NCBI GenBank assembly: GCA_963924565.1
Contig: OZ004610.1
Coordinates: 10,354,001-10,418,000, forward strand
DNA from: Ascidiella aspersa
Taxonomy: Eukaryota
Direction of reading: 5' to 3'
Length of the DNA: 64,000 nt
Shown here: positions 744 to 6,368 of the stretch, one piece after another
Numbering within the stretch: the first letter of the stretch is position 1
How the letters are laid out: each line of letters starts with the position of its first letter
Position numbers and translations under genes: made by a program
Notes under the pieces: model-generated
The model's input: only the letters and a program-made list of their open reading frames with translations
The model's database searches: none
Told to the model about the DNA's origin: nothing

Positions 744-3700
744 TCAGCCTCTGTTGTCCAGATGGACGTCAATTTTGCGTCCATCGATTTCGAAACCGTT
801 AAAGTATCGCACAGCAGCTTCAGCCTGCTCGGGCATTTCGAAGCGAACGTTCCCGAATCCACGCGACTTACCGTTGTCCATTTTGATATCGGCGAACATA
901 ACGTTGCCTGCAAACAAATATAAAACGTCACCTAAAAGTTCGACTTTGGCCGCAATGCGATAGAGTGCTTCAGTTAGTGACTTACCGCATCTCGCAAATT
1001 TGTCCCGTAGTTTTTGCCACGTTAGGCTGTATGGCAGGTTTCGTACGAACACTGTAGTTCCGGGTAAACGGTTGCCGCCTCGATGATAGTTATCTGAAAA
1101 AACGAAACAAATTAGTACTAAACAAACAACACAACACGCTTTAAAAAGCAAGTTACCATTTTTCATTGGGGGTGGCATTGGGGTATTGTTTTGCTGGCTG
1201 ATGTTGTATCCGCCACGTTCTGTCGCTGCAAGGGAACGATCTATGTCCCTTATGCGGTTGTCAACTCTGGCGATATCCCTTAAACAACAACACCAAGTTA
1301 GTTCAGTGAAGTGAAAAGTAATAACACCGCAAACAGCAGAAAAGGCACGTACATTTCAATGCGTTCTCGATCAGACAAGCTGTTTACTCCTCGAGCGGCA
1401 GCAAGTAGTCGGAGTCGGTGTTGGTCAAGAAGACGCTGGTCTAGACTGTCCCTGCTGGAGCCAAGGCCAACCGAGGAGGCAAAATCGCCAATTCCCAGAC
1501 CTGAAATACCAGCAAGACCCAAACCGGAACCTTAACAAATAACGCGACAGGATTAGATTCGAAAGGCATTGCTAAATTGGCTTTTACAAAATTACATTTT
1601 GTTTTGTGTGTCAGTTGGCCGTTCAATTTCCGCAAGTGCAGTACATTTTTGTACGCAACTCAGACGAACGAGACTTATATCATCAGTAACACAAATCTAG
1701 CTAGGTTACAGTTTCAAATGATCCGACAAAATTTTACCTGGTATTGAACCAGCTTGAAGAGTTTCACTTAAACGGCTGGCCTGTTGATTCAAGGCAGACA
1801 AGCCCATTGTTAATGGGTTTGAGCTCCCGTTTTTGTGCACATCCCTCAGACCACCAAAATCCGCACCATTACCAAGACTGCTCAATGCTGACAAGCCTAA
1901 ACAAAAAAAAAGTTTACCAACGAAACCTTGATGGGGGATTTGATAATAAACCTAATTTACCAAGTAGGCCACTGGCAGACATGTTGCTGGGAGGTCCTCT
2001 GTTCAATGGTGCATCTCCAAGTCCTGAAATAAATTTGGTGAACATTAATTGTAGGGATGTCTGATACAGTTATGGAAAGCGAAATATTAACATATGTAGT
2101 TTAAATTGGTGCCTAATCAGCTGGCCGTCATTTTCCTCTTTTGCATTACGCATCAGACGAACGAGACTTATATCATCACTTATAGCACAGTCGTTACAAA
2201 CTTTTGTAAAACACATATAAAACTTTTAATTAAAAGTAGCTACCTCCGTGATCTCTTCTCATTGCAAGAGAAGGCCCAATGCCACTTAAACCACTTGGTA
2301 GCTCAGGTCCATTCCCTTCGTGCAAATTATCTTTGTCCATCTTTACATTCATAATTCTGTTAAACAGCCTCTGCTGGTTTAACATTGCTGTGTTCAGAAA
2401 ACTGGTCAAGAAAAATTGTGATATAAAAATTATCATTGTTATTTGGTTCTAAAATCTTGTGCAATTTTCAGTTGGCCGTTCAATTTCTGCATTGGCATTA
2501 AACTTTGTGAAAGCACTCAGACGAACGAGACTTGTATCATCATCTCCAGCACAATTATGATCCCTAACACTGCTTAGTAATTTATAACATATAAAGAGTA
2601 AAGGATACATATTGCTTGCTGGGCTTCTATCGAATCGTTGTACGTAACTGTAGCCATTCCCCTGCTTTTGTTGTCTTTGTCCAGCATCAAATCAACTTTA
2701 ATAACTTGACCAGCAAGTGAAAAAACCTCTTTTAATTTTGAATAGGTAACGTTGTAGTCAAGCTGTAATTAATTGGGCATTGTCAGGTTGGTTATCTATA
2801 AACTAAAATTCTAAAATTGCAGCTTACATTGGCAACAAACACAGTTTTTCCCAGAGGGCCACGGTTCATCATTTGATTCATCGGTCTTTCATTTGCTGGA
2901 TTTGACAAGGCCATTGGTCTGCCAGCCCCCATCGGTGGTGGCATTGGAGGTAAAGGTCCATGTCTGCCAGGCATGGGTGGAGGCAACCCAGGCATTGGTC
3001 CAGGGCCAGGACCCATTCTCCGTGGTCCCCCATCCCGCATTAACATTTTCTTCACCAACTCTCCATCATAATCCTAGAATAAATTTGGTTGTTTATAATC
3101 AACTAGTTTTGTGGCGAGCTTTGCCTAAATTTACATATGTTAGTGTTTTCAGCTGGCCGTCGTTTTCATCTTTTGCACTATGCATCAGACGAACGAGACT
3201 TATATCATCATTTTTTATGGGAGCTTAAAAAAAAAATCATGTATGGTTGAAGCCACATATATTTTTGTAAAATACTATTAAATTTTTTTTTTTTAATATT
3301 TTAGCAGCTTTTAGTGTTTACCAAATGTTTAGGATGAGATGCTGTATTTTTAAAAGCCCTTGTTTAACCTTTAAAATAAAAAAATATAATTTTAGTAGTT
3401 AACTTACTGCTTTTACAACTAGTTTCCTGTTAGCAATTTCAAAGCGGTTCATCTTTTCAATGGCCTGCTCACAAGTTGCTTTGTCCTTGAATTCAACCAC
3501 CCTAATTAAAAGATAAAGATGAAGATAATAATAAGCTAAATCTATTGTCATGCCTAACAAATAAATTACACAAATACCCAATTTTATTTCAAGACAAATC
3601 AAATCATTTTGGTCATTAAACAAGACATTGTCAATCCCAAAACACATGTGTTGGCAGACAGACCTGACAAGCTACTTTCACAACAATATTTGACATTCAA

Positions 3701-6368
3701 ACATTTCAACTAGATGAATCAAAGAAACCGGCTTAGCAAAGGTTGTCACCTAACCGAGGATGAAAAAACCATACAAACACTTACCCATAACCCTACAAAT
3801 TGGAAGAGCAGGAACAATGAAAGACATTCCATCAGCAACATGTCAACAAAAGGAACATCAGTTGATAGAGAACATATCGGTTTCACAAAAACAACAAGGC
3901 CAAAATTAACTAGTTCTTGGGAGTTATTCAATGAAATATTACACTATATAGCCATATTCTTTAACCAGTGATACTGAGGAGAAACGATTCAACAACTTTT
4001 TAAATTAGGAGAGTTTCACCCAAGAAAATCATGTTAATAATTTGGGATTTACATTCAACATTGACAACTTTTTTTAGGGTTTTTACAGATCAACATAAAA
4101 TTTATCAAAAAAAATTAAACTGTACTAGCCAAAAGTTTACAAATTCCATTTAGTTGTTTTTGAGTGAACACAAAACAATGCTGGACCAACAATGTCAGAA
4201 CCTCCTTTTAACTTACCCGAGATTTACCCTGGTCATCTTTAAACAACTCCACATACGTAACTTCACCCACTGCATGGAAAAGGAAGAAAACATTAAACAA
4301 TTGTTTGTAAAATTAAACATAATAACTTCAATCCAAAGAATCCACTAAAAAAATACTGACATACATTGATTAGGAAGACCTAAAGCCTGACAATGAATTG
4401 AATGAAAGAACAGGGATGTGCCCACTGAGTTGCCTTTTAATAAAATTATATAATATTTATCCAATCTTTTTTCAATCAGAATAGTAAAAACAAGAGGCAG
4501 ATCCAAAACAACATTTATTTCATAAGCACCAACAAAGTCTCAAATTGATAGCAACAACCGATGAACTTTTTAGACAGCAATGTTGTGACATGCTTGTAAA
4601 CCACCACACTTGTCACTTAAATAAGAGTTAAATAAGGACTTTGGATAGTGGACATAGTTTCACAAAACAATTCCAAAAAAAACTTCCAGGCACAAAATAA
4701 ATGTCTACCACCTATAAATCCCTAAATCTGGCAAATTTTATTAAATAGGCACATCCCTGAAAACACTAAAACTAATTTCAACAGGTTAGTAATAATTATA
4801 ATTATTAGTTCTTTATTTCTGTTACTCCCAACTCTTGCCAAGCAATATAAGCACTTAAACCAGGGTTGGGGTGGGAATCAGAACTAGCACAGTTTTTATT
4901 ATTTTCGTTGAGCCGGAGCAAAAGCAACATTTTGAATTTGTAAATCTTACATATTAAATTTTTATTGTAGTCTAGCTCAAAGAGAGTTGGGTACAAACAA
5001 AAAACTATTATCTTTTAGCATGTTAACAATTTTTTGTATAATTTTTGATACAAATTTTTATGTATGTCATATGACTTGTGGCCCAAAAATAATTAGAACA
5101 CTAAAAACCTCCTCTTGCAATCCTTTTAAATAAGTGTTTTGTGGCCCTGAAGCCCCAACTGCATACATAATTTAAAAATGCCAAAATTTTATAACAAAAT
5201 TATGCAATTTATGCTATAAAACTGTTATTTTCCAATGTATCACAGCAATACTTTACACCAAATGTGACACTAAAGATCTTTGGTTGGCAAGCACTTGAAT
5301 ACAATCTGGCCTAGAGCCTCAAGGCATCATTGGTTAGGTGTGCGAAGGCTGCGAAGCCTATGCCTTTTAACAGTGGCTCCCCAGCCCCAATTCTTGTTTC
5401 TCTCAAAAAACAGGTTAAACACCATATAATGTAAAACATTGAAGCTGTTTTTTAACACCATTTTAACAACATCACCAAAGGATCTACCCAAGTGAAATCA
5501 GTTACTGTGTGGAGCCATTACTTTCAATAATATAAAACCACAAAATAGCATCATAATAAAATAAATTTAAGTAGCAGTGTTTGCAAAAGGTCTTTACTCA
5601 TATCTGTAAAAAAGTGGTAGGATTCTAGACCAGCGCCAAATTTACAGTAAAACAAAAGCATCAGACAAATCTTGGGCATTTTTTCACTATTGTACGTGAA
5701 AAGTTATGCAAAAAAAAATAATAATAATACCGCATACCACAACGCATATTGTTTGGGTTAGGGTGGGTCAAGTAATATTATGTTTATTATTAATAATAAC
5801 TTGACCCACCCTCAACCAAACGCTAACCCGCACCCTAACCCAAACAATATGTGTTGTGGTATGCGGCATTTGAAGAAAATTATTTTTTTTATTAATTTTT
5901 ACGTACAATAGTGAAAGAGCGCCAAATCTTGTGCTATAAGGTGAAATATTTATCTGATACAACTACGAACAAACAAATTCTGAAGGACGAAATTGATCAC
6001 AATTTAAAACACGAATAAGAAATAAACAAAATACCTTCTCGCCGAAATGTGTCTTTTAGGTTTTGCCATTTTTCCTCATAGGGTATGTTATTTACGAATA
6101 CCCTCCAAAAAGGTGGCGCCCGGCCCCCTGGACGAAATCCACGACCCCCGCCATCTCGGTTATACGGGGCCGGTCGATCACGTTTAAAACTAGACCTCTC
6201 AACACGGTCACTGTCCCGTCTGCAAACCGTAATTAAAAAAAATGAGGTTTGCACAATACTTGTTTATCGTTTAACAATAAAGTTTGCCCAAACATACCCA
6301 GGTTTTTGCTCTACTTTGACTTTCGGCTTCGTTTCCATTTCGATTACAGGGGATACAACTACACCCAT
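744..6368 (-). CDS. MYEF2/HNRNPM: Myelin expression factor 2 / hnRNP M family RNA-binding protein (3 RRMs, Gly/Met/Pro-rich linker), multi-exon
   Basis: Phase-consistent exons (minus): 6368-6298, 6219-6035, 4269-4217, 3792-3785 (8-nt microexon), 3501-3408, 3073-2828, 2762-2609, 2387-2244, 2023-1961, 1896-1738, 1530-1353, 1278-1157, 1093-986, 907-744. RRM1 RVFVNNIPYEEKWQNLKDTFRREVGEVTYVELFKDDQGKSRGYGVVEFKD; RRM2 begins TVFVANLDY; RRM3 VFVRNLPYSLTWQKLRDKF...GKSRGFGNVRF. The start could instead be the ATG at 6338. Confidence 0.93.
1605..1694 (-). ncRNA. Intronic box C/D snoRNA, copy 1 (long type A); guide to 18S rRNA
   Basis: Minus strand: TGATGA (1685-1680), tataagtctcgttcgt, CTGA (D'), internal hairpin, gaacggccaa, CTGA (D, 1614-1611). 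Short flanking stem (ttgtgt/acacaa). D box about 80 nt from the 3' splice site at 1531. Confidence 0.88.
2109..2188 (-). ncRNA. Intronic box C/D snoRNA, copy 2 (short type B)
   Basis: GTGATGA (2179-2173), tataagtctcgttcgt, CTGA ... gacggccag, CTGA (2120-2117). gtgc/gcac terminal stem. About 93 nt from the 3' splice site at 2024. Confidence 0.88.
2457..2554 (-). ncRNA. Intronic box C/D snoRNA, copy 3 (long type A)
   Basis: ATGATGA (2543-2537), tacaagtctcgttcgt, CTGA (2520-2517) ... gaacggccaa, CTGA (2471-2468). ttgtgc/gcacaa terminal stem. About 80 nt from the 3' splice site at 2388. Confidence 0.88.
3145..3215 (-). ncRNA. Intronic box C/D snoRNA, copy 4 (short type B)
   Basis: ATGATGA (3211-3205), tataagtctcgttcgt, CTGA (3188-3185) ... 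gacggccag, CTGA (3152-3149). About 75 nt from the 3' splice site at 3074. Confidence 0.86.

What the first reader, a model, noticed from the sequence alone, without database searches (positions are those of the whole stretch)
1605..3215. Four paralogous dual-guide box C/D snoRNAs in introns of the MYEF2/hnRNP M-like gene
Seen: four otherwise unrelated introns each carry, on the sense (minus) strand, TGATGA-ta(t/c)aagtctcgttcgt-CTGA...acggcca(a/g)-CTGA. Copies 1-3 have short terminal stems, and all D boxes lie 75-93 nt from the 3' splice site. Established: this is the C/D layout and the intronic position favoured for splicing-coupled snoRNP assembly. The D' guide AGUCUCGUUCGU is a 12-nt complement of the conserved 18S sequence ACGAACGAGACU, and the D+5 rule points to A1383 (human numbering, a known Am site). 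Inference: this is a multi-copy guide family in a host I do not know to carry snoRNAs in vertebrates. The copies alternate long/short (A-B-A-B), suggesting intragenic duplication from two founder types.
Basis: partly seen in the sequence, partly recalled or inferred. Interest (0 to 1): 0.85.

Follow-up and report, generated by a model that had tools for sequence, protein, structure and literature searches.

The report
Four intronic box C/D snoRNAs, ascidian hnRNP M
Four introns of a sea squirt's hnRNP M/MYEF2 gene each carry a copy of a small nucleolar RNA that should direct a conserved ribose methylation of 18S ribosomal RNA: an ordinary kind of gene in a host not reported before.

Summary
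Four minus-strand elements share a C box, a 13-nt guide, a D' box, an ACGGCCA core and a D box. Chance predicts none. A sequence model finds only these four in the 308.6 Mb genome, so this is not a dispersed repeat.

RNA-seq junctions place each element in a real intron of the host, 75-93 nt upstream of the 3' splice site. The host is the tunicate hnRNP M/MYEF2 orthologue (best hit Ciona).

The D' guide pairs perfectly over 12 bp with the genome's own 18S. By the fifth-nucleotide rule it selects A1334, the equivalent of human A1383 (SNORD30's site). No shuffle reaches 12 bp.

The second (D) guide is weak. It pairs over only 8-9 bp, which 5% of shuffles reach, and it fits four rRNA sites. In the two long copies it is identical to the Drosophila guide for Cm1367 in helix 34.

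Accumulation of the small RNAs and methylation could not be tested, because the only RNA run looks like mRNA-seq. Orthologous introns could not be fetched.

Verdict: credible new members of a known class in a lineage-specific host. Earlier scan notes report similar multi-copy intronic snoRNAs elsewhere in this genome.

The parts
3149..3211 (-). Copy 1, short type, box C/D snoRNA. C box AUGAUGA starts at 3211, D' box CUGA ends at 3185, D box at 3152-3149. No terminal stem. Lies in intron 3074-3406, 75 nt from the 3' splice site.
2457..2554 (-). Copy 2, long type. C box starts at 2543, D box at 2471-2468. External 6-bp stem formed by 2549-2554 and 2457-2462. Lies in intron 2388-2608, 80 nt from the 3' splice site.
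2109..2188 (-). Copy 3, short type. C box GUGAUGA starts at 2179, D box at 2120-2117. Terminal stem formed by 2184-2188 and 2109-2114. Lies in intron 2024-2243, 93 nt from the 3' splice site.
1603..1695 (-). Copy 4, long type. C box CUGAUGA starts at 1686, D box at 1614-1611. 7-bp terminal stem formed by 1689-1695 and 1603-1609. Lies in intron 1531-1737, 80 nt from the 3' splice site.
744..6254 (-). Host gene, the hnRNP M/MYEF2 orthologue with three RRMs. The stop codon is at 744-746 and RRM1 starts near 6200; the 5' end was not mapped. The snoRNA-bearing introns are 207-333 nt long. The two snoRNA-free introns between them are 64-65 nt (1896-1959 and 2763-2827).

Best explanation
These are four functional, intron-encoded box C/D snoRNA genes, paralogues of one family in two subtypes, hosted by the ascidian hnRNP M/MYEF2 orthologue.

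Proposed mechanism. The host pre-mRNA is transcribed and spliced. Core snoRNP proteins (SNU13, NOP56, NOP58, fibrillarin) assemble on the C/D kink-turn while the intron is being spliced. Exonucleases then trim the debranched intron to RNAs of about 70 nt (short type) and about 85 nt (long type).

First guide. The guide upstream of the D' box pairs over 12 bp with 18S 1330-1341. This places fibrillarin on A1334, the human A1383 equivalent, which is 2'-O-methylated.

Second guide. The element upstream of the D box (core ACGGCCA) may direct a second methylation at the first C of UGGCCG in helix 34. That is C1287 here, human C1336, Drosophila Cm1367, next to the conserved ac4C position. This part is only an inference.

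What is shown: the sequence anatomy, the intron positions, the complementarity to the genome's own rRNA, and the restriction of the family to this locus. What is inferred: processing, RNP assembly and methylation.
For: Conservation of the functional parts. All four copies keep the C box, the 13-nt guide, the D' box, the ACGGCCA core and the D box invariant. The spacer between D' and C' has diverged (about 12 differences between copies 2 and 4). Similarity between the introns ends within 0-3 nt of the boxes in most pairs.

First guide. It forms a 12-bp perfect helix with the genome's own 18S, starting at the nucleotide next to D', with A1334 opposite guide position 5. None of 1000 shuffles reaches 12 bp. 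The duplex energy is -19.3 kcal/mol. Human SSU-A1383 is a validated Am site assigned to SNORD30.

Intron context. RNA-seq junctions from a stranded run of the same species confirm the four host introns and the minus-strand transcription. The D boxes lie 75-93 nt from the 3' splice sites. Introns with a copy are 207-333 nt long, against 64-65 nt for the snoRNA-free neighbours.

Uniqueness. These are the only loci in 308.6 Mb with either guide next to a box, and the only significant hits of the family model. If this 18S site is methylated in this animal, these are its only recognisable guides.

Same guide elsewhere. 39 metagenome contigs hold at least 10 distinct sequences with a C box, the same guide and a D' box. 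The arrangement is therefore widespread among eukaryotes.

Second guide. Its last 10 nt plus the D box in the long copies are identical to the Rfam consensus for Drosophila snoMe18S-C1367. That Drosophila site is about 95% methylated. The 9-bp duplex is GC-rich, at -17.4 kcal/mol.
Against: No direct evidence exists for stable small RNAs. The one RNA run laid on the region covers exons almost only, has depth 0-1 over copies 1, 3 and 4, and shows no read ends at the snoRNA borders. This is expected for an mRNA library and is uninformative, but nothing positive came of it.

No Rfam family reaches its gathering score. The best matches at the permissive threshold have E 4.9-9.

Copy 1 lacks a terminal stem. 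Copy 4's C box starts with C rather than a purine. The C' boxes are degenerate, keeping only the final GA.

The D guide pairs over only 8-9 bp, which 5% of shuffles reach. It fits 18S C685, 28S C2436 and 28S C3485 about as well as 18S C1287.

No orthologous introns could be examined.
Confidence: 0.8

Rival explanations
1. The RNAs are real snoRNAs but single-guide. Only the D' guide acts on rRNA. The conserved ACGGCCA element upstream of the D box would be an orphan antisense element, a helper pairing that aids recruitment to the 3' major domain of 18S, or be kept for structural reasons.
For: The D-side helix is 8-9 bp, and 5% of shuffled guides do as well. UGGCCGU occurs four times in the rRNAs. 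The short and long types prefer different best sites: 18S C685 for the short type, 18S C1287 or 28S C3485 for the long type. The Drosophila guide for the same site pairs over about 12 bp.
Against: The last 16 nt before the D box are identical in copies 2 and 4, although their spacers differ at about 12 positions. The 10 nt next to the D box equal the Drosophila Cm1367 guide in the same register. The duplex energy of -17.4 kcal/mol is close to that of the D' guide.
Confidence: 0.45
2. Some or all copies are decaying duplicates (pseudo-snoRNAs) that no longer accumulate. For example, copy 1 has no terminal stem and copy 4 has a CUGAUGA C box.
For: Copy 1 has no flanking stem. Four copies are redundant. 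No small-RNA reads were seen (uninformative).
Against: The boxes and the guide are invariant in all four copies, while the flanks are unalignable. All four keep the favoured distance to the 3' splice site. No other guide for A1334 exists in the genome.
Confidence: 0.12
3. The elements are not snoRNAs but conserved intronic cis-elements, for instance splicing or autoregulatory sites of the RNA-binding host. Their likeness to box C/D would be coincidental.
For: The host is an RNA-binding splicing regulator. One of the four introns (copy 2) shows some retained-intron reads, at depth about 4 against 25-38 on the exons.
Against: A C box, a D' box and a D box at canonical spacings, plus a 12-bp perfect antisense match to a known rRNA methylation site in the correct register (0 of 1000 shuffles), is not expected of a splicing element. 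The same C box, guide and D' module recurs in unrelated eukaryotic contigs.
Confidence: 0.03
4. The elements are copies of a dispersed repeat or mobile element.
For: This genome has retroelements with box C/D-like tails, according to earlier scan notes.
Against: There are only four copies in 308.6 Mb, all in one gene and on one strand. The family model's next hit has E 0.8.
Confidence: 0.01

Closest known systems
Vertebrate SNORD30 (U30)
   Same: It is a box C/D methylation guide for the same 18S nucleotide, human SSU-A1383, which is A1334 here. It is also intron-encoded.
   Different: There is no Rfam match to it, even at E up to 10. According to Krogh et al. 2016, the human RNA uses its D guide for SSU-1383 and its D' guide for LSU-3804. 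Here the 18S guide sits at D', and the other guide is unrelated. From my own knowledge, the vertebrate host is the non-coding SNHG1/UHG gene with a single copy. Here the host is a protein-coding hnRNP M/MYEF2 gene with four copies.
Drosophila snoRNA:CD40 / snoMe18S-C1367 (Rfam RF04329)
   Same: The 10 nt before the D box, plus the D box itself, are identical to the long copies and in the same register. Both point at the first C of UGGCCG in helix 34.
   Different: The model score is 17.6 bits against a gathering score of 101. The Drosophila guide pairs over about 12 bp, this one over 9 bp (long type) or 8 bp (short type). The Drosophila D' side is unrelated. The list shows no Nm site between Cm1367 and Gm1621, so Drosophila seems to lack the A1383-equivalent methylation.
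Multi-copy snoRNAs in introns of one protein-coding host, such as U14 in three hsc70 introns and U17 in six Xenopus RPS8 introns (from my own knowledge)
   Same: Several paralogous copies of one snoRNA sit in different introns of the same gene, in sense orientation, one per intron.
   Different: The host gene and the snoRNA family differ. Here two subtypes alternate along the gene.

Membership tests
Box C/D methylation-guide snoRNA (class) | C box RUGAUGA near the 5' end and D box CUGA near the 3' end | tested here: met
   C boxes are AUGAUGA, AUGAUGA, GUGAUGA and CUGAUGA. All four copies have a CUGA D box 62-75 nt downstream. Copy 4 has C at the R position.
Box C/D methylation-guide snoRNA (class) | 5'/3' terminal stem that brings the C and D boxes together | tested here: inconclusive
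   Stems of 5-7 bp are present in copies 2, 3 and 4 and absent in copy 1. Against shuffled flanks the duplex energies are only marginal (fraction of shuffles as good: 0.04-0.19).
Box C/D methylation-guide snoRNA (class) | Internal D' and C' boxes | tested here: inconclusive
   D' is a perfect CUGA directly after the guide in all four copies. C' is degenerate (AGAUGA, AGAGGA, UGCAGA, UGCGGA), with only the final GA invariant.
Box C/D methylation-guide snoRNA (class) | Antisense element of 10 bp or more abutting D or D', with a known Nm site opposite position 5 | tested here: met
   The D' guide forms 12 bp, perfect, using guide positions 1-12, with 18S A1334 (human Am1383) at position 5. None of 1000 shuffles reaches this. 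The D guide forms only 8-9 bp.
Box C/D methylation-guide snoRNA (class) | Sense-strand intronic position about 70-80 nt upstream of the 3' splice site (typical of animals) | tested here: met
   Introns are confirmed by spliced reads. The distances are 75, 80, 93 and 80 nt.
Box C/D methylation-guide snoRNA (class) | Accumulates as a stable 60-100 nt RNA bound by fibrillarin, NOP56, NOP58 and SNU13 | not testable with these tools
   The only RNA run is an mRNA-type library. It has depth 0-1 over copies 1, 3 and 4 and no pile-up of read ends.
SNORD30 (U30) family | Sequence and structure match to the curated family model | tested here: not met
   No match at the gathering threshold in the window, and none at E up to 10 in 1400-3500.
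SNORD30 (U30) family | Guides SSU-A1383 | tested here: met
   Met by complementarity and register only. Methylation was not measured.
SNORD30 (U30) family | Second guide for LSU-A3804 | tested here: inconclusive
   The D guide has a different core (ACGGCCA). I could not map the human LSU-3804 equivalent with certainty on this 28S.
Drosophila snoMe18S-C1367 (RF04329) | Match to the family model at its gathering score (101 bits) | tested here: not met
   17.6 bits, E 4.9, copy 4 only.
Drosophila snoMe18S-C1367 (RF04329) | D guide over helix-34 UGGCCGUUC that selects the first C | tested here: met
   Copies 2 and 4 pair over 9 bp, using guide positions 2-10. Copies 1 and 3 pair over 8 bp including one G-U pair.

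The most novel reading that the evidence does not exclude
The D guide is functional and methylates the first C of the helix-34 UGGCCG (18S C1287 here, human C1336), directly 5' of the conserved ac4C position. That modification is so far listed as Drosophila-only (Cm1367). A tunicate would then share it, through a snoRNA that couples it to the vertebrate-type Am1383 guide. This would imply either an old bilaterian Cm lost in vertebrates or convergence at a site where methylation and acetylation may interact.
Probability: 0.35. Interest if true: 0.5.

Novelty: new member of a known kind. Interest (0 to 1): 0.3.

Why it matters
Tunicate snoRNAs are barely annotated: covariance-model surveys found only 12-24 per species. 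This locus gives the likely guide for a conserved 18S methylation in an ascidian. It also shows another lineage-specific change of host gene, to an hnRNP M/MYEF2 orthologue; I found no report of that gene hosting snoRNAs. The wider interest lies in the second guide. If it works, the helix-34 Cm known from Drosophila is not insect-specific and sits beside the ac4C site. Otherwise this is ordinary snoRNA biology, useful for annotation.

Tried and rejected
- Rfam at gathering scores found nothing in the window. At the permissive threshold it gave only chance-level hits.
- Looser guide patterns in the window's own genome gave six extra places (L005, L006, L050, L051, L060, L061). None has a C box at a proper distance, and one lies in coding sequence. 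All were rejected.
- My own box C/D scan of the whole window, both strands, against the rRNAs found only the four copies plus one spurious hit inside a coding exon (2783-2872).
- Expression: one mRNA-type run confirmed splicing but cannot show snoRNAs.
- The metagenome scan found the same D' guide in 39 contigs, but none has the ACGGCCA guide and none lies next to hnRNP M-like exons. Rfam has no family for them.
- Segmental duplication of exon-intron blocks: flank alignments are not better than shuffles (z of 2.1 or less), and only a marginal similarity exists between the 3' ends of the copy 1 and copy 3 introns.
- Literature searches for MYEF2 as a snoRNA host and for SNORD30 in tunicates gave nothing useful.
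Exon pieces were searched by reference only.

Full report
**Observation**

Read on the minus strand, the region 1400-3500 holds four elements of the same build. Each has a C box, then TA(T/C)AAGTCTCGTTCGT, a CTGA (D') box, a spacer, ACGGCCA(A/G), and a CTGA (D) box.

The 26-nt pattern covering the C box, the guide and D' matches at 3185-3210, 2517-2542, 2153-2178 and 1660-1685. All four are on the minus strand. Dinucleotide-preserving shuffles give 0.00 expected matches.

Copies 1 and 3 measure 62 nt from C box to D box, and copies 2 and 4 measure 75 nt. Copies 1 and 3 share 60 of 65 positions. Copies 2 and 4 share 64 of 76, with the differences concentrated in the spacer between D' and C'. 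The short/long alternation along the gene is therefore real.

**Not a repeat**

The 17-mer covering the guide and D', allowing one mismatch, occurs in the 308.6 Mb assembly only at the four copies and at two unrelated places. One of those is coding sequence, and neither has a C box.

Looser patterns for either guide add four more places, none with a C box.

A sequence-only model of the four copies (R1) scores them at E 1e-18 to 1e-22. The next hit in the genome has E 0.8.

**Host gene and intron context**

A stranded RNA run of the same species (X5) gives spliced reads for these introns: 1529-1735, 1896-1959, 2023-2242, 2388-2608 and 2763-2827. The cut points may shift by +1 or +2. A loose end at 3073 continues in the exon that ends at about 3407. 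All reads indicate minus-strand RNA.

Each snoRNA therefore lies in a separate, confirmed intron of 207-333 nt. The two introns between them that carry no copy are only 64-65 nt long. The D boxes lie 75, 80, 93 and 80 nt from the 3' splice sites. From my own knowledge, this is the range described as optimal for splicing-coupled box C/D assembly (Hirose and Steitz 2001).

Exon pieces, searched one by one by reference without joining them into a spliced model, carry RRM_1 domains.

The RRM3 piece finds Ciona intestinalis F6QST8 as its best relative among 1.84 billion representatives (54% identity, three RRMs). Bird MYEF2 and primate HNRNPM follow.

The host is thus the tunicate hnRNP M/MYEF2 orthologue. 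Earlier scan notes also take this genome for an ascidian.

**The first guide (D')**

I took the genome's own rDNA unit and delimited 18S, 5.8S and 28S with Rfam.

The 12 nt next to D' pair perfectly with 18S 1330-1341. The helix starts at the nucleotide adjacent to the box, and guide position 5 faces A1334. None of 1000 shuffled guides reaches 12 bp, and the duplex energy is -19.3 kcal/mol.

The numbering offset to human is 49. It follows from the helix-34 landmarks: human Um1326, Gm1328 and ac4C1337 correspond to Drosophila Um1357 and Gm1359. A1334 therefore equals human A1383, a validated Am site assigned to SNORD30.

The same guide has a weaker match to 28S A2595, covering guide positions 4-12 with one G-U pair.

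**The second guide (D)**

The invariant core ACGGCCA complements UGGCCGU, which occurs four times in the rRNAs.

- The long copies pair over 9 bp with 18S 1284-1292 in helix 34. By the fifth-nucleotide rule this selects C1287. They pair equally long with 28S around C3485.
- The short copies pair over 9 bp with 18S around C685 in a variable region. Copy 3 also pairs over 9 bp with 28S around C2436. Both short copies pair over 8 bp, including one G-U pair, with helix 34.

About 5% of shuffled guides reach 9 bp, so complementarity alone does not establish this guide. Two observations favour helix 34.

- The weak Rfam hit of copy 4 to Drosophila snoMe18S-C1367 rests on identity of the last 10 guide nucleotides plus the D box, in the same register. 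Cm1367 is a roughly 95% methylated site guided by snoRNA:CD40 and flagged as Drosophila-only.
- The 16 nt before the D box are identical in copies 2 and 4 even though their spacers have diverged.

By my register, Cm1367 and C1287 are the C directly 5' of the ac4C-equivalent, not the same nucleotide. The preprint calls the human position orthologous to the ac4C site.

I put the chance that this guide is functional at this site at about one in three.

**Other anatomy**

Terminal stems flank copies 2, 3 and 4 but not copy 1. The C' boxes are degenerate and keep only the final GA. Short hairpins in the spacer could bring D' and C' together; this I read from the sequence.

Similarity between the host introns ends at the boxes, and flank alignments do no better than shuffles. 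The copies are therefore either old or were moved as snoRNA-sized units. Duplication of whole exon-intron blocks has no support.

**Relatives elsewhere**

An exact-pattern scan of metagenome contigs found 39 contigs, with at least 10 distinct sequences, that carry a C box, the same guide and a D' box. These are followed by other C' boxes and other D guides. None has ACGGCCA.

No Rfam family covers them, and none lies beside hnRNP M-like exons. The guide for this 18S site, placed at D', is thus widespread in eukaryotes. The pairing with the ACGGCCA guide and the hnRNP M host were seen only here.

**What could not be done**

- The RNA run is an mRNA-type library. It confirms splicing but cannot show whether 70-85 nt RNAs accumulate.
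- Methylation cannot be tested in silico.

**Comparison and verdict**

In how they work, these are standard intron-encoded box C/D methylation guides. Functionally they are the counterpart of vertebrate SNORD30 for Am1383. They are not members of that Rfam family by sequence, they differ in which box carries the guide, and they differ in host (non-coding SNHG1 in vertebrates, from my own knowledge).

Several copies of one snoRNA in different introns of one protein-coding gene is a classical arrangement, as with U14 in hsc70 and U17 in Xenopus RPS8 (my own knowledge). Earlier scan notes describe similar cases elsewhere in this genome.

I found no report of MYEF2 or hnRNP M as a snoRNA host.

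The finding is real and well read, but it is a new member of a known kind. The only part with wider interest is the unproven helix-34 guide.

Noticed in passing
L011-L049 (metagenome contigs): 39 environmental eukaryotic contigs hold box C/D snoRNA-like genes with the same 18S guide at D' but different D guides (for example ..CAACTAACAC.., ..ATACGGAA.., ..CACCCATAAC..). No Rfam family reaches its gathering score on the 16 contigs tested.
   Followed up: partly
G000 contig C5, 8.8-14.5 Mb (L007-L010): At least 13 complete 18S genes lie scattered over about 6 Mb on both strands. Two neighbouring copies are 7.55 kb apart (one unit: 18S 1812 nt, 5.8S, 28S 3679 nt). The rDNA is therefore not one simple head-to-tail array in this assembly.
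   Followed up: no
window 2305, 2911, 2933: All RNA reads of run X5 differ from the window at three exonic positions (A>T, C>A, C>T on the + strand). The same letters stand in the contigs of run X3. These are allelic or strain differences, not RNA editing.
   Followed up: partly
window 2388-2608: The intron with copy 2 shows low read depth (about 4, against 25-38 on the neighbouring exons). A 172-nt contig from a marine metatranscriptome (X1) crosses its 3' splice site and ends inside the snoRNA. This is either unspliced precursor or DNA carry-over.
   Followed up: no
28S position 2595 of the genome's own rDNA (L010): The D' guide also pairs with 28S AACGAGAUU (guide positions 4-12, one G-U pair), with an A opposite position 5. 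This is a possible weak second target of the same guide.
   Followed up: partly
window 3072-3089 and 2022-2039: The 3' ends of the introns holding copies 1 and 3 share ACCAAATTTATT just before the splice site. The similarity of the intron tails is only marginal (fraction of shuffles as good: 0.06).
   Followed up: yes
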